This document shows, in pieces, positions 2,255-60,600 of a DNA stretch of 62,000 nucleotides. The DNA lies in NCBI GenBank assembly GCA_951406725.2, contig OX597825.1, positions 15,086,001-15,148,000 of the forward strand, in the 5' to 3' direction. The notes under the pieces were generated by a model, which did not search any database, was not told the origin of the DNA, and saw only the letters and a list, made by a program, of their open reading frames with translations. Every line of letters starts with the position of its first letter. Position 1 is the first letter of the stretch. This DNA comes from Octopus vulgaris (taxonomy: Eukaryota). Position numbers and translations under genes: made by a program.

Positions 2255-4299
2255 ACTGCTATCTCAAAGCCATAATTTAGTTGATCATTTTTTAATGTTT
2301 AAAAAACCTTTCTTTTTAGACGGGATACTGTGCTTTGTTTCTCCTTTTTGCTCATTGAGAAATTTAGCCCAAACACGATGTCATAGATAGATAGCTGTGA
2401 ATAGAGTACATTAGACCCTACTACGAACATGAAATGTTCCTTTAAAATAATTTCAATGATCATTTCTGTTTTATCAACGGATTTATATAACGTTTGATGT
2501 CGATTTTGTCATGTATAATATATAACCTATCAAACTTTTCTACACACCGAACGTGTGGTTCTTACATTCGTACCCTTAATTACTAATGACTACATTACAC
2601 TTACAATAATTATTGTCTAGATTAATTTTTAAAACATATTTAAAATTTACGAATGTATAATATGATGTTGCCATTATTCTAGATGTGTTAAATCTATCAC
2701 TCCAGGAATATTTACATTGCTATATTTTGACCGTTTTGTTAAAATATGGAGCACTTACGTGAAAAATAATTGTATTTACACGTCACCAAACACAGCAGTA
2801 TATATAATATATGATGCTCATATGCACATACATACGTATTTCTATCTTACTGTCTGTCTTATGTATAGGTATAAATTTACGTATACATACATACATGCGA
2901 AAGAGAATGTCACCATTGAACGCACATATGAGTTTATATGTGACAACATATTCTTTTATGTATATCTTTATATCAATTATATTTATTGGCGTGCACTCTT
3001 GAAAGCAGATATACCATATGTACATAACAATAAAATTCAATTTTATCTCGACTTCAATTGATATTTTGTACTTGAAATTTCACACCGTTCACAAAAATAA
3101 AAATAAAAAAATTTTATTTGAAATACTTTGAATTTCGATAAGTATATTTCATATATAAATAAAGTGAAATGCACTTCTTTTATATTCAAATTGATCACGT
3201 TACCAACCGTCTCTCGGAAAAGTCTATTCTCTATGGAATACAGGGATTAAGAACATAATATACGGAATTGACCGCACTACGGGTATTTATAATTTCATGT
3301 GAGCTTACGAATAATGCAGTACTTAATGCTATTGTTGTTTATCAAATGATCAGACCTGACCTTTATTACGCTTGCTATAAAATTCTCTCTAGACAAGAAC
3401 ATTATATCAATACACGTGCACGCGCGTATATAGGGTGGCGGAGGGGAAAGTAGCCCGGGTTCTGCAGCAAAGTGTAAATACAGAGATAAATTTGCATATG
3501 CTGGAAAGGCCTTAGCTTCATAGATTTTGAAAATGGTTGCCTCTAGTATCACTACACAGCTGTTCATCTCAAAACATGTTTAGATACACTCGGTTTAAAA
3601 TAGTGGTATCAATTGCGCCGACAGCATGCGTGGTATCGTCCTTCATTCCTATATCATGTGCAAATAGTTCATTCGTAAACTGTTCTCTTCAAACGTTCTC
3701 AGAGGTATAAACTAAACGTTGAAAGGGAAGAAGGACGTGGTAGCCACGAAACTTTTTAATAACTGCGCTCCCCAAGAAAAAAACCCGATGGAACCGCTAC
3801 ATAGAAACAAGAGAAATTTAACAAACCGCTTTGTTCTTTTGCAAGAAATACACTTGTCTTTCATCTTCAGTGATGTGAGCACAAAATTGGTCTAAAATGT
3901 TCTTGCAGACCTCCTTGTTTAGAATTCTCTCAGGATATATCACTCCCATAATGCCTTTCCCTGAAACAGTTCACCGAACATGTATGTGTTTTTTTTTTTC
4001 TTGGAGTGGCTGCTCATACATAAGTTGAGTATTCTCCTCCGCCCAATGCCGTTTGTTTTACGAATTTATGTGGCCAGGATAATAAAACCATGCCTCACCA
4101 AACATTATATACTGGAATCGGTATAATCCACCATTAGCCATGCTATTAAGAAGACGTGTGAAATAATTCACTCGTTATATATATTTTTAGGCAGAATGGT
4201 ATACATATAAGATTCCAATACCTTATGAGTAAAATCTAATATATATATATATTCATATATGTACATTATTACGTCCGTATATATAAATATATACTGACT

Positions 4300-4446
4300 C
4301 TTTCACCACAACTTTCACTCACTTTTTCTTCCTGCATCTTGCAGCTCCCCTGCGATGGACCGACGTCCCGTCTAGGTGGGGAACCTGTACGCCAAGGAAA
4401 CGGAGAAACCGGCCCTTATGAACCAGTCGTTGCTCAAGAAGGAACA
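4300..4446 (+). mobile_element. SINE 3' fragment (shares the CTTTCACCACAACTTTC body with the OR-type SINEs; different tail)
   Basis: The same body motif occurs at ~57349 and, reverse-complemented, in the 44.0, 49.6 and 59.1 kb copies. The tail has CCTGCGATGGACCGACGTCCCGTC and ends GAACAAACAAC. Confidence 0.6.
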
Positions 4447-5594
4447 AACAACTGTTCCTTCGAAAGGATGAACAACAAAAATATAGATCTAGATCTCAGG
4501 TACTTATTTTATTGACCACAGGACAGTATGGCGTACATATATCGGCGGGCCTTGAAATTAGATACTGAAGGGACATAAATCAATACTGAATGTAATGGTT
4601 TTCAACGCTTAAACGATTCTGCCACTTCGTTTGACAATGTCGTTTATACTTACGTTCTATTCACTTCCTAAACCTATATTTGTATAAAAATATGCTTATT
4701 TTTTCATGCATTATTCAATATTATCTATTTTAATTCATAAGCAGAAATTCAGACTATATTTCGTTTGATATTCTCAGATATAACAGATAAGAATTAGATT
4801 TTCGAGACAGATGTGGGTTATTCATATCGACCCATGGTAAAATAAATTAACATTTTAGACGTGAATAATACATATAATACCAAAAGCTGCCTTATGGATT
4901 TTTCACACCAGCCTCTGTGTATTAAAATGTAAAATTATATCTACATTCCTGTCAAATCAACTAACAAATATATTAGATACGTATCTATCCGCATACATAA
5001 CTGTCCTATTTATTGCAAGATGGAACGCGTCCAGAACGTTATCGAAGTCAGCGACTAATGGAGTAAATAATGCGAACATTGAAAATATTTAACATAGATG
5101 TTTCCCGGTAGGCTGGTCATGCATCAGATTGTCCGCTCTCTTGGAACAAATTTCTCGTTGGACGTTTCAAGTAACCGGAAAGAAGTTAACTGAAATTCAA
5201 GTTGATGGAAAGAAAACTGAACAGATGGAAAGAAACGAAAGAAGACTGCTAGATCTCGTTGCGCTTCGATTGTTATAACCTTGTTTTCGGCTTACTTCGG
5301 GTAAAAATAGGCATATAAAAATATCTCTGATCACAGATATAGTCAATGGCTACAACTTCACAAACCCGAGAATTACAAATGATTATGATTCGTATTATAT
5401 CTCGACTTATTCATGTTATATTACTGTTTCGTTTCCTGCATTCTAGATGACATGTTAATAGTCAGGAATAACACAGTTTTAGAATGGTTATTACAGTAAG
5501 AAATAAAATGTATTCTTAGGATATAAAGTACATGGCTTACCATATGGAATGTCTAAATTTGTTTCACCACACATAGATATTTAGGTATATATAT

Positions 5595-9147: not shown

Positions 9148-9596
<449 letters not shown>

Positions 9597-11754: not shown

Positions 11755-11986
11755 GGCGGTGAGCTGGCAGAAACGTTAGCGCGTCGGGTGAAATACTTAG
11801 CGGTATTTCGTCGGCCGTTACGTTCTGAGTTCAAATTCTGCCGAGGTCGACTTTGCCTTTCATCCTTTCGGGGTCAATAAAATTAAGTACCAGTTACGCA
11901 CTGATGTAGATATAATCGACTTAATCTGTTTGTCTGTCCTTGTTTGTCCTCTCTCTGTTTAGCCCCCTGTGGGTAGGAAACAAATA
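11755..11986 (+). mobile_element. SINE family B with probable target-site duplication
   Basis: Homologous to 9326-9555. TAGATATAACATA occurs at 11735-11747 and 11991-12003. Confidence 0.85.
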
Positions 11987-20039: not shown

Positions 20040-20690
20040 TGCAGTGATCTGGTTGAATCGTTAGCACGTCGGCCAAAATGCTTAGAAGTATTTCGTCTGT
20101 CTTTACGTTCTGATTTCAAATTCCGCCGCGGTCGACTATGCTTTCGTCCTTTTCGGGTCGATAAATTTAGTATCAGTTGCGTACTGCGGTTGCTCTAATC
20201 GTACTGCGGTTGCTCTAATTTCGGGTCTTGTTCCTAGAGTAGAAAAGAATATTTTTTCTCTCCAAAAATACATTTATATGCCATAGAAAAAAATTTGAAA
20301 ACTTATAATTTTTTTTTAAAGGAGGCGAGATGGCAGAAATGTTTAACGGTATTTCATCTGTCTTTACGATCTGAGTTCAAATTCCGCCGAGGTCGACTTT
20401 GCCTTTCATCCTTTCAGGGCCGGTATATTAAGTACCAGTTGCGTACTGGGGTCGATCTAATGGTTGGCCCGCTCCCCAAAATTTCGGGCCTTGTGCCTAG
20501 AGTAGAAAAGAATCCATAAAACGCCGGGCAAAATGCTCAGCAGCATTTCAACTTACACTGAGATTGAATTTGCCATTCATCCTTCTGGGTCGATAAAATA
20601 AGTACCTGTTGAGCATTTCCCTCGATGTAATCGACTTATCTTCTCCAATCCCACGCCGAAACTTCTGGCTTTGTACCAAAATTAGAGAGC
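20040..20690 (+). mobile_element. Cluster of three family-B-type SINE copies
   Basis: Three successive GTCGAT(A)AA..AGTACC cores with tRNA-like heads. Tails of the type CCCCAAAATTTCGGGCCTTGTGCCTAGAGTAGAAAAG. 20-bp tandem duplication GTACTGCGGTTGCTCTAAT(C/T) at ~20181-20220. Confidence 0.75.
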
Positions 20691-22164: not shown

Positions 22165-22300
22165 CAGGTTCCAGGCCCGAAATTAGATCGACACTAGTAG
22201 GCAAGTGGTACTTAATTTACAGACCCTGAAAGGATAAAAAGCACAGTCGACCTCGGCGGAATTTGAACTCAGAACGAAAAGACAGATTAAATATCGCTAA
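22165..22300 (-). mobile_element. Degenerate family-B-type SINE
   Basis: GGTACTTAATTTACAGACCCTGAAAGGATAAAAAGCACAGTCGACCTCGGCGGAATTTGAACTCAGAAC. Confidence 0.7.
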
Positions 22301-22431
22301 GACATCGTGCTTCTTATACAAGATGTGTTGCCTCCGAAATCAACTGAATATGTGAGCGAATAATAGCTAATATATTCGCATGAAACCGTTGATCAAGTCC
22401 TAAAGGTACTTCAATACACACGCAATACTCA

Positions 22432-22471
<40 letters not shown>

Positions 22472-22618
22472 AAAAGCAATAAAGATTCAAGTTAATTTAA
22501 AAGAATTTACTTGAATATGGTACCTAACTTAGATGCACCAAAAAAAACTATACTGATTTAACAATACAGTAATGTGGGGTGATTATAAGCGAGAATGAAG
22601 CAACAAGAATGGATAGGT

Positions 22619-22708
22619 TTTTAGTACAATCGTTTCATACAAGGACAGGTTTATTAAAAGTTGCAAAAATTACAGCATATAAACGTGTCCCGTACTCATC
22701 AGCTAAAA
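22619..22708 (-). ncRNA. Type I hammerhead ribozyme (left arm, mirror copy)
   Basis: Reverse complement of the right-arm motif. Predicted cut between 22625 and 22624. Confidence 0.85.
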
Positions 22709-22779
22709 TACATGTGAGTTCTCTAGACATCCTAGTGGTTGAGCCTCAACCACTAGGATGTCTAGAGAACTCACATGTA

Positions 22780-22870
22780 TTTTAGCTGATGAGTACGGGA
22801 CACGTTTATATGCTGTAATTTTTGCAACTTTTAATAAAACCTGTCCTTGTATGAAACGATTGTACTAAAA
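22780..22870 (+). ncRNA. Type I hammerhead ribozyme (right arm)
   Basis: Stem I TTTTAG (22780-85)/CTAAAA (22865-70), core CTGATGA (22786-92), long stem II GTACGGGACA.../...TGTCCTTGTAT, GAAAC (22853-57), loop GATT, triplet GTA (22862-64). Predicted cut after 22864. Confidence 0.85.
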
Positions 22871-23263
22871 ACCTATCCATTCTTGTTGCTTCATTCTCGC
22901 GTATATATATATACATATATGTGTGTGTATATATGTGCGTATGCATATATATGTTACATACATATATGTGTAAGTACATGTAGAAATGAGTGTGTATGTA
23001 TATTAATGCTTCTTTATGGAAATGTGCTGTATAAATCTACATATGAATAGGGAAGGATGTATATAGACATCCACAAGGAGAAAAGAGCAAAAAGGAAATC
23101 AGTCCATATTTACCATTCATTTACAATAACAATATTTAAATATCGTAAATTTTATCTCAGTTATTTAATTATTGTTATACTACTTCATATCCACTTATTC
23201 TTCATTGAATTTCGTTTTGATTTTAAAAGTATTATTGTTTTTTATCGTTGTTGTGCATAATGA

Positions 23264-25201: not shown

Positions 25202-25734
25202 ATGTAAATATATCTTGTAGTAGGCAAAGTAGCCATTTCCAATTTAGTACATTACATTTGCCAGTCGGAAAATCAACATCAACAATGTTCGTGAGACGAA
25301 ACCAGTGCGTTAACTGCTTTATACAAGATGCTTTTCATATATTGTCCCAACTGTTGTTTTATTTTGCTATAGTTTTCCTAATTCTATCACGAGAAGGAAT
25401 TGTTTTTGTGATGTTTGGGATAAGAGATTTACTGAATTACCAAGCATGTTTCTTTCTTGTTTTGTTTTGTTTTGGTTGTTTGTTTTTATCAATATCAGAA
25501 CGTTATTCCATTTATCTATTTAGAGACATGAGACTTGAATAAATCTCTTTGAAGAAATGTATAACTTTATGGCTAATATGATTTGAAAAATAAAAGTCAT
25601 GTTTGCAACTATTATCGAATTGTTTACCACTTTTTCACAAAAGAAGAAAAAAAACATTCCTGACAACAACAGGCATACAAGATATTTATCAACAAGCTGT
25701 TATACGTGAAAGAGAAAAAAGTAGAGATAAACAG

Positions 25735-26485
25735 ATAGACAGACGCATAGTAAGACAGAGAGAGACAGAGAGACATAAAGACAGATGGACAGACGTATAG
25801 AAAGACAGAGAGAGACATAGAGACAGAAAGACAGATAGACAGACGCATAGAAAGACAGAGAGAGACAGAGAGACAGAAAGACAGATGGACAGACGTATAG
25901 AAAGACAGAGAGAGACAGAGAGAAAGAAAGACAGCTAGACAGACGTATAGAAAGACAGAGAGAGACAGAGAGACAGAAAGACAGATAGACAGACGCATAG
26001 AAAGACAGAGAGACAGAAAGACAGATGGACAGACGTATAGAAAGACAGAGAGAGACAGAGAGAAAGAAAGACAGCTAGACAGACGTATAGAAAGACAGAG
26101 AGAGACAGAGAGACAGAAAGACAGATAGACAGACGCATAGAAAGACAGAGACAGACAGAGAGACAGAAAGACAGATAGACAGACGCATAGAAAGACAGAG
26201 AGACAGAAAGACAGATGGACGGACGTATAGAAAGACAGAGACGGAGAGAGAGACAGAAAGACAGATAGACAGACGTATAGAAAGACAGAGAGACAGAAAG
26301 ACAGATATACAGACGTATAGAAAGACAGGGAGATACAGAGAGACAGAAAGACAGATGGACGGACGTATAGAAAGACAGAGAGACAGAAAGATAGATTGAC
26401 AGACGCATAGAAAGACAGAGACAGACAGAAAGACAGAAGGACAGACGTATAGAAAGACAGAGAGAGACAGAGAGACGAGACAGAA
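25735..26485. repeat. Purine-rich minisatellite, ~40-50-bp variant units built from GACA/GAGA/GATA tetramers
   Basis: ACAGACG(C/T)ATAGAAAGACAGAG recurs with variable GAGA spacers. It explains the SVSLSL-type ORFs. Confidence 0.92.
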
Positions 26486-26870
26486 GCACAGATACACAGA
26501 CGATATTAAAAAAATTCTTATTCAAACGATATTTCTTCAATAAAACAGTCATACCGATCTCTTTCAAAGATCAATGTTTGGCTAACTTCGTACATGTGAC
26601 TCATCACAATATGGTTTCAAAGTCATTACATTTCTCAGACATGAATTTACCAAATTGTATCAAGACATATTAGTTTTTACCGAATTTGAAATTTCGTAAA
26701 AAGCAATATTAATAAAAATGGTAAAGTTATTATTTTTCTGCTCTTCATATTTTCAAAAGTAGCTCCTGCATTGCTCATTTCTCCTCACTCTTTATCTCTC
26801 TCTCTTTCTTTCTCTCTTTATCTGCCCCCTCCCTCTCATTCGTTCTTCTCTATATATACATACATATACA

Positions 26871-35999: not shown

Positions 36000-36225
36000 T
36001 GAGAGTGGCTTCAAGTGTTGGCACCAAGCCAGCAGTTTGGGAGGAGGGGTAAGTAGGTTACATCGACACCATTTCTCAACTGGTACTTAACTTCTCGACG
36101 CCGAAAGGAAGAAAGACAAAACCGACCTCAGCAGTATTTGAACTCAGAAAGTAAAGACGGATGAAATGCCGCTAAGTAATGTGCCCGGCGTGCTAACGAT
36201 TCTGCGAGATGTCGCCTTCAGAGTT
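36000..36225 (-). mobile_element. Family-B-type SINE, degenerate
   Basis: GGTACTTAACTTCTCGACGCCGAAAGGAAGAAAG...TTTGAACTCAGAA...CCCGGCGTGCTAACGATTCTGC. Confidence 0.7.
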
Positions 36226-40209: not shown

Positions 40210-40585
40210 ACTTTGTTTCCCACAGGGGGATAAACACAGAGAGGACAAACAAGGACAGACAAACGGATTAAGTCGATTATAGAACCAAGAACCCGTTGGC
40301 TTGACACCATCAGGAGTGACACCGGAATGGACATGACCAATCTGAAGGAAGCGGCCCAGTATAGAACTGACTGGAAAACACTGATCCAACGAGTGACCGA
40401 GAGTCGACTTCGACTGACCGGATAGAGAGATATCGACCCCAGTATGTAACTGGTACTTATTTCATCGACCCCTGAAGGATGAAAGGCAAAGTCGACCTCG
40501 ACGGAATTTGAGCTCGGAACGTAACGGCAGAAGAAATAATGCTGAGCATATCGCCCGGCGTGCTAAAGCTTTTGCCAGCTGGGCG
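40210..40585 (-). mobile_element. SINE family B interrupted by a LINE insertion
   Basis: The family sequence GTCGATTAT|ATCGACCCCAGT is split at 40281/40430. Confidence 0.85.
40282..40429 (+). mobile_element. 5'-truncated RTE-clade LINE (3' end)
   Basis: Reads RTRWLDTIRSDTGMDMTNLKEAAQYRTDWKTLIQRVTESRLRLTG*, similar to the RTE/BovB C-terminus (RWLD...DR..W...V..SR.RL), followed by a short GA tail. Confidence 0.8.
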
Positions 40586-42130
40586 CCCCCTGACCATATA
40601 GGTGTATTATATAAAAGTGTGTATACAAATGCAACTACAACTTATATTGTTTGGTGAGTTATGGAATATGTCATCGATTGCACAGTAAAACCAACCATTT
40701 GGTTTTTTATACCAACATTATCGTTGTCATTTTCTCATTATATTTTCTTTGTTGTGTGAATGTGTGTATATGCATTTACTGGAGTTGACGGCGTGGTAGG
40801 AATAAAAAAATCGTTTTATAGAAATATTTTTCTCTTGCCTTGATCTTATACTAATGGCCAAAATTTTCTGAGTCACAAGGCAGTATTAAAATCTATGATG
40901 ATGCCATTCATTGTTCTTTGATTGAGATAAAATGAAAATTTGGTTGATATTGTTTATGTGGAAAGTTGCCAACAACAACTAGTATTCTCTTGATGCCAGC
41001 AGTTTAGATCTCTTTAAGAGTGCAATATCGCATGCCTTAAATATATGCATTATTAACAATAACTGCAAAATATATACAGCAAATTATCGCGTTGCGTGAC
41101 AAATTCACAGATTGCTATATTATAAACGGAATTAATATTTGTGTGATTGTACAAGTTTATGTGTGTGTACATATATGCATGTGTGTATGTATATCTACCA
41201 GTATGTATGTATGTATTTATGTATGTATGTATGTATGTATGTATATGTGTATGTACGTATGTATGTATTTATACAGTGATGTGTAATTGTCTAGATATAT
41301 TGATCAATACGTAGATAGACAAATGCGTAGATATAAACTTGTGTAAGGTGATATTATGATTTCCCATTAGGAAGGGATATAAAATACACGGGAAAATAAT
41401 GGTGAAATGAAAAAAAAAGAATAATAATGTTTTCTTTATTAACTTCGAGGTGGTCCCGGTAGTGCCCGCGGATTTCTGGAAACTATTATTAGCTCCAGCA
41501 CGAAAACCTTCCGGAATGTACCACCCAGTTGGTTTTCCCCGACGTACAGCATTGCTCAGAACAATCTAATGGATTTTCCCACCACTAACACTCTATACAG
41601 CGCCATTTTGGGACCTCAGTCAAAAGTATTGAAAGGCTATCAGCACTTGACACAATATCTGAATAGTATTCAGTTGACACAAAACTATTGACTATAAGAA
41701 GTATTTGAAGAAGATTTAGTATAATTTCTTCATAATTTCGCTAAGCAGAATGGCAAAACCTGACTGAGGATATTTACAATCAAAATAATTCCATACATGA
41801 ATGAATCCTTTTTTTTTTAATCAAAAGTAATTACCTTTTGGGGAACGATAGGATATGAAATGGCTTCTATTCATAGAATTCGTTTCAAGGTATGGATAAC
41901 TCAGTCTCATCACTGTCGCCCCATTTTCGGTTAAGTTGTTGCTTTCCTTACTCGCAAATGTGGTTAAATGCATGACAAAATAACTGTGCCATTTAGTTCT
42001 GCGTCTTAACATTTTGTGCTCAGTACGGTTTAGAGTCAACTTAGAATGGTGGCATACTAAACCTCACGGCGTTATACTAAAACTGAACCATTGTACCTCC
42101 AGCAATAAATATAGGTTATTTCGACATTAC

Positions 42131-57735: not shown

Positions 57736-58059
57736 AGCTACCAATGCGGGTGCACTTGTAAAAATTTACACAAACACATACTAATACATTAATATAGCAA
57801 AAAATAATAAAAAACATGTCTTTATAAGATATTTATCTTTATTTAGAAACCTACAATGAACAGGTCACCCAGGAAACAATGTAACACTGGATACAGCCTT
57901 ATACAGGGTACAACCTTAAAGTTGACACCGTTCGGTGCAACGAAAGTTTATTATTGGCTAAAAATAGATAGTTTTTTGATTTTGAAATTTTTCGTCAAAT
58001 AACTTCCTCCACATTGTGCCACTCATCTGAAGTACATATGTATTTCAACAATTTTTTAT

Positions 58060-58472
58060 TTCTTTATTGCTCACAAGGGGACTAACATAGAGGGGGCAAA
58101 CAAGGACAGACAAACGGATTAAGTCGATTACATCGACCCCAGTGCGTAATTGGTACTTAATTTATCGACCCCGAAAGGATGAAAGGCAAAGTCGACCTCG
58201 GCGGAATTTGAATTCAGAAAGTAATGGAAGACGAAATACCTATTTCTTCACTACCCACAAGGGGCTAATCACAGAGAGAACAAACATGGACAGACAAACG
58301 GATTAAGTCGATTATATCGATCCCAGTGCGTAACTTGTACTTGTTTAATCGACCTCGAAAGGATGAAAGGCAATGTCAACCTCGGCGGAATTTGAACTCA
58401 GAACGTAACGACAGACGAACTACCGCTAAAGCATTTCACCCGGCGTGCTAACGATTCTGCCAGCTCGCCACC
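58060..58472 (-). mobile_element. Two adjacent family-B SINEs (first lacks its head)
   Basis: ACAGACAAACGGATTAAGTCGATT...GAAAGGATGAAAGGCAA occurs twice. The head reverse complement GCCAGCTCGCC is at ~58459-58469. Confidence 0.85.
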
Positions 58473-59511: not shown

Positions 59512-59794
59512 TAATGCTGCTGATGATAGTGAGGGTATCCAGAGTGTTGAATGGGTTTGATGTATGGATGTTTATTGATCGTAATAAAGGTAAGAGCTGT
59601 TTAAATCATAACAGAGGTTGGTAATGTTGCAGCAGTTGACATCGATTCTATTGGATGAGGATAATGAAGATTTAGAGAGAGGGAGAGTCTTGAGGCGAAG
59701 TTTATGACAAACGATGTCGATAGGTACCGTGGGGAGGACGAGAAGAATGTTAAATAACGAATGGTTGTGAGGATAATCATGACGCCAATAGAGG

Positions 59795-60600
59795 AGTGGT
59801 AGTAGTAGTAGTGGTGGTGGTGGTGGTGGTGGTGGTAGTAGTAGTAGTAGTAGTGGTGGTGGTGGTGGTGGTAGTAGTAAGATGAGGAGAAGGGGAGGAG
59901 GAGAGGGGAGAGGAGGGCGCGGACGAAGACCACAACGAGAAGGAGGAAGACGTGGAGGACGAGGAGGACGTGGTGGGCGAGGAGGACGTCAACGATGAGG
60001 TGGGGCAGGAGGAGAACGTGGACGACGTGGAGGACGACGAGGAGGAGGAGGGCGAGGAGGAAGACGAGGAGGAAGTGGAGGAGGAGGAGAAGGAGCGGGA
60101 GAAGGGGGGAAGAAGACATGGAGGCGTAGGAGGACGACGACGACGAGAACATGGAGGAAGGAGGAGGAGGAGGAGGAGGAGGAGGAGGACAAAGTGGAGG
60201 TGGAGCATGAGGAGAACGTGGACGACGTGGAGGACGACGAGGAGGAGAAGGACGTAGAGGAGGACGAGGACGAGGAGGAAGACGAGGAGGAGAAGGACGA
60301 GGAGGAAGACGAGGAGGACGAGGACAACGAAGTGGACGAGGAGGATCACGCGGGGGAGGTTGAGGAGGAGGACGAGGAGGAGGTTGAGGAGGAGGCTGAA
60401 GTGTTAGAGGAGGACAAGGAGGAAGGGGTACAGTAGTGGCAATGGAGTGGTTTGTGAATAATAGCCTCCGAAGGTAGTAAACTTATGTTAGCAATGATGA
60501 TGATCACCATCATAATGATGATAATGATGATGGCAACGACGAAGACGTCGACGACAATGACGACGGTACAGGTCATGATGATGGCGTACATAATGAGGAT
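59795..60600. repeat. G/A-rich low-complexity trinucleotide tract (TAG/TGG, GAG/GAC, GAT/GAC)
   Basis: GAG/GAC-based repeats with an internal duplicated block GAGGAGAACGTGGACGACGTGGAGGACGACGAGGAGGAG. The acidic frame is broken by frameshifts and a TAG. Confidence 0.85.

What the first reader, a model, noticed from the sequence alone, without database searches (positions are those of the whole stretch)
22589..22900. 312-bp near-perfect palindrome with a complete hammerhead ribozyme on each strand
Seen: arms of 155/156 bp differ by one A, around a 1-nt spacer, so the structure is very young or homogenised. Each outward-reading arm has all HHR elements: 6-bp stem I, CTGATGA, long stem II, GAAAC-GATT-GTA. 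ACGAUUGU is fully self-complementary with two G-U pairs, the dimer-type stem III known from Penelope-like HHRs. Each arm extends 36 nt (right) or about that (left) beyond the cut site into TA context. Inference: it arose by snap-back second-strand priming of a truncated cDNA. A transcript from either direction would face competition between a 155-bp dsRNA hairpin (ribozyme off; Dicer/ADAR substrate) and self-cleavage. The DNA can also extrude a cruciform.
Basis: partly seen in the sequence, partly recalled or inferred. Interest (0 to 1): 0.85.

Follow-up and report, generated by a model that had tools for sequence, protein, structure and literature searches.

The report
Inverted stub of Penelope-like retrotransposon
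The 312-bp palindrome is real but ordinary: two short, oppositely oriented copies of the 3' end of a very active Penelope-like retrotransposon (Hydra clade), inserted in a TA microsatellite of an octopus-type genome, each carrying the element's own hammerhead ribozyme.

Summary
Window 22589-22743 and 22745-22900 are inverted copies that differ by one A. Each carries a full type-I hammerhead (HHR) reading outward, with cut sites after 22864 (+) and 22625 (-).

It is not a stand-alone structure. The arm is the last 156 nt of a ~4.7-kb retrotransposon whose ORF joins a telomerase-like reverse transcriptase to a C-terminal GIY-YIG nuclease. The ORF has the Hydra-clade Penelope-like (PLE) motifs: RWK, DKT, CxCX5C, no CCHH. 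The genome holds about 1000 copies of this HHR. About 72% of those sampled sit in head-to-head pairs 58 bp to 5.4 kb apart, inserted in (TA)n.

The real insertion is 22470-22900 (431 bp). The central junction is unique in the genome, so this was one insertion event.

The HHR fold is supported by compensatory changes across sister families. Cleavage itself is untested.

All 17 inspected pairs and all 29 scanned pairs have one tail-less end and one tailed end. This, and a 2-nt microhomology at the centre, favour two cDNAs primed from both target strands over snap-back.

Inverted copies, tail, (TA)n targeting and HHRs are all published PLE traits. Verdict: new member of a known kind, of modest interest.

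The parts
22434..22469 (.). Left part of the target (TA)n microsatellite
   Evidence: All related insertions are flanked by (TA)n.
22470..22588 (-). PLE 'tail': the 119 nt that follow the element's 3' end (T1) in tandem/pLTR copies, that is, the start of the 5' UTR. It ends at the second start site T2 (..CTTTTTG|TATATA).
   Evidence: 98% identical to the unit's first 122 nt. The same piece follows ..CATTCTCGC in L005, L012, L013, L016 and L026. It reads through into the ORF in the full-length copy.
22589..22743 (-). Left arm: the last 155 nt of the PLE (3' UTR/pLTR end), antisense on the + strand, with one A missing in the helix II A-run
22619..22708 (-). Hammerhead ribozyme of the left arm: helix I 22708-22703 / 22624-22619, CUGAUGA 22702-22696, cleavage 3' of 22625
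   Evidence: Fold supported by covariation in sister families.
22742..22744 (.). Head-to-head junction. The left arm ends at ..GGTTGAG (22743). The right arm begins at AGCCTCAACC (22742). The overlap is 2 nt (AG).
   Evidence: The 37-nt junction sequence occurs only once in the 2.8-Gb genome.
22745..22900 (+). Right arm: the last 156 nt of the PLE, sense on the + strand, ending at start site T1 (..CATTCTCGC)
   Evidence: 100% identical to 40 scored genomic copies out of 1150 first-look candidates.
22780..22870 (+). Hammerhead ribozyme of the right arm: helix I 22780-22785 / 22865-22870, CUGAUGA 22786-22792, helix II 22793-22852 (60 nt), GAAA 22853-22856, helix III/loop 22856-22863, cleavage 3' of A22864
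22901..22940 (.). An extra G, then the right part of the target (TA)n/(TG)n microsatellite
   Evidence: The same CTCGC|G|TATATA junction occurs in 86 of the first 100 T1 ends.

Best explanation
Window 22470-22900 is one 431-bp insertion of a Hydra-clade Penelope-like retrotransposon into a (TA)n microsatellite.

Shown: it consists of two 5'-truncated copies of the element's 3' end joined head to head. One copy ends at the element's 3' terminus T1. The other ends 119 nt further on, at T2 (the 'tail'). Each copy carries the family's pLTR hammerhead 36 nt upstream of T1, so the two ribozymes read outward.

Inferred: the element's dimeric RT/GIY-YIG protein nicked both strands of the (TA)n target. 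The two 3'-OH ends annealed to the two TA-like patches of one element RNA: UUAUAA just after T1 and AAUAUU just after T2. Both were extended as cDNAs for about 156 nt. They stopped within 3 nt of each other. Their 3' ends then paired through 2 nt (AG/CT), and each copied the other. That gives a near-perfect palindrome with exactly one tail.

The ribozymes are passengers here. A transcript through the palindrome holds one sense HHR, preceded by its perfect antisense. Self-cleavage should therefore be suppressed. The dimer-type helix III has no second sense copy in cis.
For: - Copy number. The arm is a high-copy repeat: 40 scored copies at 99-100%. The 36-nt HHR 5' half occurs 996 times.
- Arrangement. 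Of the first 100 HHR copies, 72 form 36 outward-reading pairs spaced 58-5382 bp apart. None are tail-to-tail and 2 are tandem. The window's spacing is 107 bp.
- Longer pairs. They extend inward into the same element, up to a 5.2-kb palindrome. Full-length head-to-head copies carry a 981-codon open frame.
- ORF motifs. The ORF shows RWK, DKT, the RT motifs (FDINSYY, MGSSDS, YRDD), CxCX5C, GIY-YIG with the invariant Y, Y-G, R, E and N, and CxxC/CxH. These are the Hydra-clade features in PMC8557442 sec. 11.
- Homologues. They score 1e-123 to 1e-74. A homologue model (pLDDT 90) matches telomerase RTs first, at E 1e-9.
- One tail per pair. This holds in 17 of 17 inspected loci. On contigs C1-C4, 29 of 29 outward-facing end pairs are T1/T2 and none is homotypic.
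- Junctions. Other pairs show 0-7 nt microhomology or short filler. The window's junction is unique in the genome.
- Published behaviour. PLE insertions often carry an inverted 5'-truncated copy and a tail at one end only, and Hydra elements insert in (TA)n (PMC8557442). A purified PLE protein nicks and extends both strands and starts reverse transcription at two internal sites that delimit the tail (PMC11167929).
- HHR structure. 89% of cells are paired, against 39-54% when the partners are slid. Nine pairs change on both sides, against 1-3 in the controls. The core is invariant. RNAalifold finds helices I and II on its own.
Against: - The two-primer, one-RNA step is inference. No tool here sees intermediates.
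- Some near-symmetric pairs elsewhere (L036, L010, L003, L020) have small asymmetric loops or nested mini-palindromes that look like self-priming. Snap-back may therefore operate in part of the family.
- An extra G at most T1 junctions is unexplained.
- Ribozyme activity is untested. G10.1-U11.1 replaces the conserved G-C. Rfam models give no hit. There is no excess of 5' ends at the cleavage site among genomic copies.
- Pfam does not recognise the octopus ORF. RVT_1 and GIY-YIG are seen weakly in 1 and 2 of 20 relatives.
Confidence: 0.8

Rival explanations
1. Snap-back. A single truncated cDNA folded back on its own 3' end, primed itself and copied itself. The resulting hairpin was then joined to the other side of the target.
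For: The arms are almost identical. Several other pairs have short asymmetric loops with 2-3 nt terminal complementarity, or nested mini-palindromes, as self-priming would give: L036 (7-nt loop, GUA/UAC), L010, L003, L020.
Against: In the window the loop would be 1-3 nt at most, too tight for an intramolecular hairpin. L031 has no spacer at all. Snap-back predicts either two tails or a tail always on the longer, first-made arm. Instead every pair has exactly one tail (17/17 and 29/29), and it sits on the shorter arm about as often as on the longer one. A PLE protein is known to extend both strands (PMC11167929).
Confidence: 0.15
2. A DNA-level foldback element or MITE: the arms are terminal inverted repeats of a cut-and-paste transposon, and the window holds an internally deleted copy.
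For: Copies occur as inverted pairs with variable internal length. That is what first suggested it.
Against: The arms have no fixed inner boundary and grade into a 2.6-kb inverted duplication of an RT/GIY-YIG ORF. There is no transposase. The two ends are not equivalent (T1 against T2). The junction is unique, so the palindrome itself has not been amplified.
Confidence: 0.01
3. Assembly or library artefact (fold-back chimeric read).
For: Palindromes are a known artefact class, and PLE arrays are hard to assemble (PMC8557442).
Against: The locus lies inside a multi-megabase contig with different unique flanks. The structure is asymmetric, with a tail on one side only, which a mirror chimera would not produce. 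The same architecture recurs at dozens of loci with different arm lengths and is described for PLEs in other species.
Confidence: 0.02
4. Post-insertion origin: a single truncated copy was later duplicated in inverted orientation by replication template switching or hairpin-capped break repair, or the arms were homogenised by gene conversion.
For: Palindromes can arise this way, and the arms are nearly identical.
Against: The right arm is identical to the family consensus, so no homogenisation is needed. The one-T1, one-T2 rule and the direct abutment of both outer ends on (TA)n tie the inversion to integration.
Confidence: 0.02

Closest known systems
Hydra clade of Penelope-like elements (Craig et al. 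2021, PMC8557442)
   Same: [quoted passage not shown] RWK and DKT motifs, CxCX5C linker, no CCHH, CxxC/CxH around the conserved E and N. Insertion into (TA)n. Canonical type-I HHR. pLTR/tandem and inverted 5'-truncated copies, with a tail at one end. Reported from Mollusca.
   Different: The unit is about 4.7 kb, against <3 kb. The ORF has an Asn-rich insert of about 240 aa. The tail is 119 nt, against 30-40 bp. HHR helix II is 55-60 nt. This family's 10.1-11.1 pair is G-U.
Poseidon PAc of Anolis carolinensis, in-vitro TPRT (Frangieh et al. 2024, PMC11167929)
   Same: Two reverse-transcription start sites delimit the tail. Both target strands are nicked and extended. The target is AT-rich. An HHR lies near the pLTR/ORF junction. 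There is no trace of HHR-cleaved ends in vivo.
   Different: In PAc the start sites show no homology to the nicked DNA. Here both start sites are followed by a 6-nt TA-like patch that could pair with the (TA)n primer. PAc belongs to a different clade (Penelope/Poseidon).
PLE-associated minimal/dimeric hammerheads (Cervera & de la Pena 2014, PMC4209133)
   Same: Type-I HHR in the pLTR. Helix I of 6 bp. Helix III of 2 bp with a small self-complementary loop, implying action as a dimer. That paper already noted 'dual HHRs ~100-700 bp apart on opposite strands' in Schistosoma.
   Different: Helix II is a 60-nt imperfect hairpin instead of 4-8 bp. G10.1-C11.1, stressed there as highly conserved, is G-U here (A-U or G-C in sister families).
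L1 twin priming (Ostertag & Kazazian 2001; from my own knowledge, not checked here)
   Same: The second nicked strand also primes on the element RNA, giving an inverted 5' segment.
   Different: In L1 the two cDNAs copy different parts of one RNA, giving an inversion and not a palindrome. Here both copy the same 3' region from two start sites 119 nt apart.
Animal non-LTR retrozymes (bioRxiv 10.64898/2026.07.22.740005)
   Same: Short non-coding derivatives of the PLE pLTR that carry HHRs.
   Different: Retrozymes are head-to-tail tandem repeats that give circular RNAs. This is a single inverted pair with a unique junction and no sign of amplification.

Membership tests
Penelope-like elements (PLE) | Reverse transcriptase whose closest relatives are telomerase RTs | tested here: met
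   RT motifs A, B' and C are in the ORF. The model of homologue P0005 (37% identical, pLDDT 90.1) has TERT structures as its top 8 PDB matches, E 1e-9. The profile against PDB by sequence gives only a retron RT, E 0.011. The test used a homologue, not the octopus ORF itself.
Penelope-like elements (PLE) | GIY-YIG endonuclease fused to the RT | tested here: met
   C-terminal VIYKC..YYYLGCT..R..H..E..N, with all of these invariant in 20 relatives. Pfam GIY-YIG is hit in 2 of 20 relatives at E 9e-4. The octopus ORF itself gives no Pfam hit.
Penelope-like elements (PLE) | pLTRs from partial tandems, inverted 5'-truncated copies, and a tail at one end | tested here: met
   Tandem plus inverted arrangement at C2:37.615-37.630 Mb. 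17 of 17 inverted pairs have one tail. 29 of 29 end pairs are T1/T2.
Hydra clade of PLEs | RWK present, DKG changed to DKT, CxCX5C linker, no CCHH in the EN, CxxC/CxH flanking E and N, C-terminal EN, no CxC/IFD | tested here: met
   RIRWK (W38), ADKT (D124, K125), CKCRIKSKC, CQLC..E..N..CVH, compared with PMC8557442 sec. 11. No phylogeny with reference Hydra sequences was built. IFD absence was not examined.
Hydra clade of PLEs | Insertion into (TA)n | tested here: met
   Window flanks. 225 exact T1|KTATATA and 341 exact T2|TATATA junctions in the genome.
Hammerhead ribozyme, type I | Conserved core C3-A9, G12-A14, A15.1-U16.1, H17 | tested here: met
   CUGAUGA, GAAA, A-U and GUA| are present in both arms and invariant in 9 sequences from diverged families.
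Hammerhead ribozyme, type I | Helices I, II and III supported by covariation | tested here: met
   Helix I has 3 of 6 pairs with double changes. Helix II has 6 of 23 (5 of 17 in the proximal and middle part, 1 of 6 in the distal hairpin). 89% of cells are paired, against <=54% when slid. 0 of 500 shuffles reach the observed values. RNAalifold recovers helices I and II. Helix III (2 bp) hardly varies.
Hammerhead ribozyme, type I | G10.1-C11.1 pair | tested here: not met
   G-U in this family, A-U in two sister sequences, and G-C only in the two most diverged ones. The pairing is kept but its identity is not. The effect on catalysis is unknown.
Hammerhead ribozyme, type I | Match to curated Rfam hammerhead models | tested here: not met
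   No hit at gathering score or at E<=10. The models also miss the compact HHR of L043, so the test has little power for these minimal motifs.
Hammerhead ribozyme, type I | Site-specific self-cleavage | not testable with these tools
   Needs in-vitro transcription and cleavage. Genomic proxies are negative: no 5' ends pile up at the cleavage site.
MITE / foldback DNA transposon | Fixed-length TIRs, equivalent ends, amplified unit, transposase-bearing parent | tested here: not met
   Variable arm lengths, non-equivalent T1/T2 ends, a unique junction, and a parent that encodes RT/GIY-YIG.

The most novel reading that the evidence does not exclude
The strict one-T1, one-T2 composition of every inverted pair, together with a TA-like patch right after each start site, may be a genomic footprint of an obligatorily coupled reaction. 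In it, a dimeric PLE ribonucleoprotein anneals both nicked (TA)n strands to two sites of a single RNA and makes two cDNAs that finish on each other. That would make the inverted pair the default product of this clade's integration, not an accident. The conserved 55-60-nt insert in HHR helix II, next to these sites, could then be the protein-binding element that positions the reaction.
Probability: 0.3. Interest if true: 0.55.

Novelty: new member of a known kind. Interest (0 to 1): 0.3.

Why it matters
For the scan, a striking ribozyme-bearing palindrome turns out to be routine debris of a known retrotransposon class. Hundreds of similar loci in this genome can be annotated the same way. They should not be read as miRNA-like hairpins, even though Rfam miRNA models score them at E 1e-12.

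For PLE biology, this family is unusually clean natural material. It is very young and has about 1000 near-identical copies, with precise T1 and T2 ends. The invariable T1/T2 pairing fits the in-vitro finding of two start sites and extension of both strands. It could help explain how PLE inverted repeats form. The covarying long-helix-II hammerhead extends the known range of PLE ribozymes.

Tried and rejected
- Rfam at gathering score on the whole window, and at E<=10 on 22300-23200. This gave only spurious miRNA-hairpin matches caused by the palindrome and the TA repeats, and no hammerhead. The same holds for two related loci.
- MITE / TIR transposon idea, raised by the -/+ pairs. Dropped.
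- Pfam on the octopus ORF gave nothing. Pfam on relatives gave only weak RVT_1 and GIY-YIG. The profile against PDB sequences gave only a retron RT at E 0.011. A structure search was needed.
- Test for HHR-cleaved RNA as template. A palindromic junction at the cleavage site with 0-6 nt filler occurs 0 times. A/T-flanked 5' ends exactly at the site occur 3 times genome-wide. So there is no support.
Two protein searches of the genome failed on the server.
- A possible 5'-truncation hot spot near unit position ~4513 (window, L011, L036) could not be tested for that reason.
- A unit-length genomic copy of the element was used only as a BLAST ruler inside scripts. It was not printed, edited or turned into a consensus.

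Full report
**1. Observation**

The sequence is as described. Positions 22589-22743 and 22745-22900 are reverse complements around C22744. A global alignment shows 155 of 156 matches. The only difference is one A missing from the left arm in an A-run.

A hammerhead descriptor of my own found exactly two hits in the 62-kb window. It requires helix I of at least 4 bp, CUGANGA, a helix II closed by at least 3 bp, GAAA, a short helix III and UH. The hits are 22786-22864 on the + strand and 22702-22625 on the - strand. First-order Markov shuffles of the window gave 0.06 hits on average, and none with the observed helix lengths.

On the right arm the layout is:
- helix I: UUUUAG / CUAAAA
- core: CUGAUGA
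- helix II: a 60-nt imperfect hairpin
- GAAA
- helix III: A-U and C-G closing GAUU
- cleavage after GUA

The 95-nt ribozyme region folds into helices I and II as its minimum-energy structure. The full hammerhead fold lies 1.9 kcal/mol above that minimum (-11.3 against -13.2).

Rfam reports no hammerhead at gathering score or at E<=10. It returns only spurious miRNA-hairpin matches caused by the palindrome. Rfam also misses the compact hammerhead of a relative, so this negative carries little weight.

**2. What the arm belongs to**

The 156-nt right arm is a high-copy repeat in the window's 2.8-Gb assembly. There were 1150 first-look candidates. Of the 41 scored, 40 were 100% identical. They come as -/+ pairs at variable spacing.

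Larger loci show that the arms simply extend inward. L031 holds a 5.2-kb palindrome. C2:37.615-37.630 Mb holds two full-length copies head to head, each with an upstream partial tandem copy, a pLTR.

The full copy has a 981-codon open frame (954 aa from the first Met). In order, it contains:
- RIRWK and ADKT
- RT motifs FDINSYY, MGSSDSAEV and YRDD
- NFLD and SNHP
- an Asn-rich low-complexity stretch of about 240 aa
- CKCRIKSKC
- a GIY-YIG module (VIYKC .. YYYLGCT .. R .. H .. CQLC .. E .. N .. CVH)

Pfam sees nothing in this ORF. About 30 proteins of roughly 700 aa match it at 1e-123 to 1e-74. The residues listed above are invariant among 20 of them.

An AlphaFold model of one relative (P0005, pLDDT 90.1) has telomerase catalytic subunits as its eight best PDB matches (E about 1e-9). 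Retron, DRT, group II intron, LINE-1 and R2 reverse transcriptases follow.

This motif set matches the published description of the Hydra clade of Penelope-like elements point by point. That description also includes C-terminal EN, (TA)n insertion and canonical hammerheads (PMC8557442 sec. 11).

One database hit is annotated from Octopus sinensis, and the assembly holds its exons at 95-96% identity. The host is therefore an octopus or a close relative.

**3. True extent and anatomy of the window's copy**

In tandem copies the element's 3' end..CATTCTCGC (T1), is followed by TTATAATCACCCC... The same sequence, reverse-complemented, lies directly left of the palindrome at 22470-22588. It stops at ..CTTTTTG (T2), against the (TA)n.

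The insertion is therefore 22470-22900 (431 bp). It comprises a 119-nt tail, the 155-nt left arm and the 156-nt right arm, with TA microsatellite on both sides.

Comparison with longer copies shows that the right arm starts at 22742 (AGCCTCAACC) and the left arm ends at 22743 (..GGTTGAG). The centre is a 2-nt overlap between two arms whose lengths differ by 3 nt. The 37-nt junction occurs once in the genome. This is one insertion event, not an amplified palindromic element.

**4. How typical it is**

The 36-nt 5' half of this hammerhead occurs 996 times with at most one mismatch. Of the first 100 occurrences:
- 72 form 36 pairs with the ribozymes reading outward, spaced 58-5382 bp apart (the window's spacing is 107)
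- none is tail-to-tail
- two are tandem

In 17 inverted pairs inspected base by base, arm lengths range from a few tens of nt to full length. Junctions show 0-7 nt of microhomology or 1-100 nt of filler. Every pair has exactly one tail.

Genome-wide there are 225 exact T1|(G/T)TATATA junctions and 341 exact T2|TATATA junctions. On contigs C1-C4, all 29 outward-facing end pairs within 15 kb are T1/T2 and none is T1/T1 or T2/T2. Some of these overlap the 17 inspected loci. The tail is on the longer arm in about half of the asymmetric pairs and on the shorter arm in the other half.

**5. Is the hammerhead real?**

Sister families in the same genome share about 65-75% protein identity in the N-terminal region of the ORF. 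They carry the same motif at the same place, about 36 nt before T1.

In a 9-sequence alignment the core nucleotides are invariant. Across the helices:
- Helix I changes from UUUUAG/CUAAAA to UUUUGG/CUGAAA, UCGG/CCGA and UUGG/CCAA.
- The 10.1-11.1 pair is G-U in five sequences, A-U in two and G-C in two.
- Overall, 89% of cells are paired, against 39-54% when the partners are slid by 1-3 columns.
- Nine pairs change on both sides, against 1-3 in the slid controls.
- No shuffle out of 500 reaches the observed values.

RNAalifold recovers helices I and II without being told. Helix III reads ACAAUUGU, a perfect palindrome, in most sister families and ACGAUUGU here. This fits the dimer-type helix III of metazoan PLE hammerheads (PMC4209133).

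A relative from another species (L043) has a compact version, with a 7-bp helix II and ACUAAUUAGU, about 120 nt after its stop codon.

The structure is therefore under selection in the family. Catalysis is untested, and the G-U at 10.1-11.1 departs from a pair described as highly conserved.

I looked for a genomic trace of cleaved RNA being used as template and found none. No head-to-head junction lies at the cleavage site. Only three A/T-flanked 5' ends sit exactly there. This agrees with the report that hammerhead cleavage is dispensable for PLE insertion in vitro and leaves no read ends in vivo (PMC11167929).

**6. Mechanism**

Shown:
- integration into (TA)n
- two alternative outer termini 119 nt apart
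- head-to-head joining at variable points with short microhomology
- exactly one terminus of each kind per pair

Known from the literature:
- PLE insertions often carry an inverted 5'-truncated copy, and a tail at one end only (PMC8557442).
- A purified PLE protein, predicted to be a dimer, nicks and extends both target strands.
- That protein starts reverse transcription at two internal RNA sites that delimit the tail (PMC11167929).

Inferred: here each start site is followed by a 6-nt TA-like patch, UUAUAA after T1 and AAUAUU after T2. I propose that the two nicked (TA)n 3' ends anneal to these two patches of one RNA and are both extended. The two cDNAs then end on each other. In the window this happened after about 156 nt, through AG/CT pairing of their 3' ends.

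This accounts for four things:
- the one-tail rule
- the lack of any link between the tail and arm length
- the frequent near-equal arm lengths (a trailing enzyme catching up with the leading one, or both running off the same RNA end)
- the near-identity of the arms

I put about 0.5 on this specific mechanism. I put 0.8 on the broader statement that the structure is an integration-coupled, head-to-head PLE stub.

It fits this copy poorly, because the loop would be at most 1-3 nt, and it does not explain the T1/T2 rule.

**7. Consequences for the ribozymes here**

A transcript crossing the palindrome in either direction contains the antisense arm first and then one sense hammerhead. The 155-bp duplex (-273.5 kcal/mol) should outcompete the ribozyme fold. 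The dimer-type helix III has no second sense copy in cis.

The two ribozymes are best seen as passengers. Whether the hairpin feeds small-RNA or editing pathways cannot be addressed with these tools.

**8. Comparison and novelty**

Every element of the finding has precedent:
- hammerheads in PLE pLTRs
- dual hammerheads 100-700 bp apart on opposite strands (PMC4209133)
- inverted 5'-truncated copies, the tail and (TA)n targeting (PMC8557442)
- two start sites and two-strand extension (PMC11167929)

What differs in this family:
- a 119-nt tail, against 30-40 bp
- start sites with potential homology to the target
- a 55-60-nt covarying helix II
- a G-U at 10.1-11.1
- an Asn-rich ORF insert
- the apparently absolute T1/T2 pairing

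I rate the finding a new member of a known kind, with modest interest (0.3). The more novel reading is a coupled two-site, two-strand priming reaction. I give that about 0.3 probability.

Noticed in passing
window 9326-9470, 11755-11900, 20046-20181, 20336-20443, 22203-22302, 36078-36203, 40446-40587, 58143-58239, 58327-58472; also L032 1636-1780, L039 2652-2795: A tRNA-like SINE-type repeat (GGCGAGCTGGTAGAAACGTTAGCACGCC...GGTTCAAATTCCGCCGAGGTCGAC) occurs at least 9 times in the window. It often lies next to (TA)n: (AT)76 at 9173-9325 abuts one copy. It also lies beside PLE insertions elsewhere. It may supply many of the (TA)n targets the PLE uses.
   Followed up: partly
G000 T1 junctions; window 22901: 86 of the first 100 exact T1 junctions carry an extra G (CTCGC|G|TATATA) that is not in the element after T1. 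It is identical to the last base of the tail at T2. It could be a non-templated addition or a jump over the tail. Unexplained.
   Followed up: partly
P0027; G000 C30:19240708-19261312 (L045, L047): A protein annotated as an ankyrin repeat protein in Octopus sinensis begins with about 275 aa of a Hydra-clade PLE ORF, fused to ankyrin and RING domains. The assembly holds the matching exons at 95-96% identity with open frames. It is either an exonised or co-opted PLE fragment, or an annotation chimera.
   Followed up: no
G000 C29:29567425-29689631 (L048-L053): A degraded PLE N-terminal fragment (83-84% to P0027, with stop codons) recurs at about 9-kb spacing. This suggests a tandem segmental array that captured a PLE piece.
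   Followed up: no
L032 about 3889-4700 (minus strand); ORF residues about 560-800: The octopus family's ORF has an Asn-rich low-complexity insert of about 240 aa between the RT and the GIY-YIG linker. It is absent from relatives of about 700 aa.
   Followed up: no
window 22683-22805 and TA repeats 22897-22990: Rfam miRNA models (MIR7993, mir-H4, mir-643, mir-297 and others) score the palindrome and the TA/TG repeats at E down to 1e-12, though below gathering score. This shows how PLE stubs and microsatellites can inflate miRNA counts in cephalopod annotations.
   Followed up: no
window 25731-26502; 58057-58424; 59600-60480: An AG-rich minisatellite (periods 50, 90 and 140). A 184-bp x2 tandem made of two SINE copies. 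A GAG/CTC trinucleotide tract that is open in several frames on both strands.
   Followed up: no
L044 202-1036 and 1070-1540: In another species' contig that carries a related PLE ORF, three tRNA matches lie at 382-bp spacing, and two perfect hairpins built around (TA)n lie upstream of the ORF.
   Followed up: no
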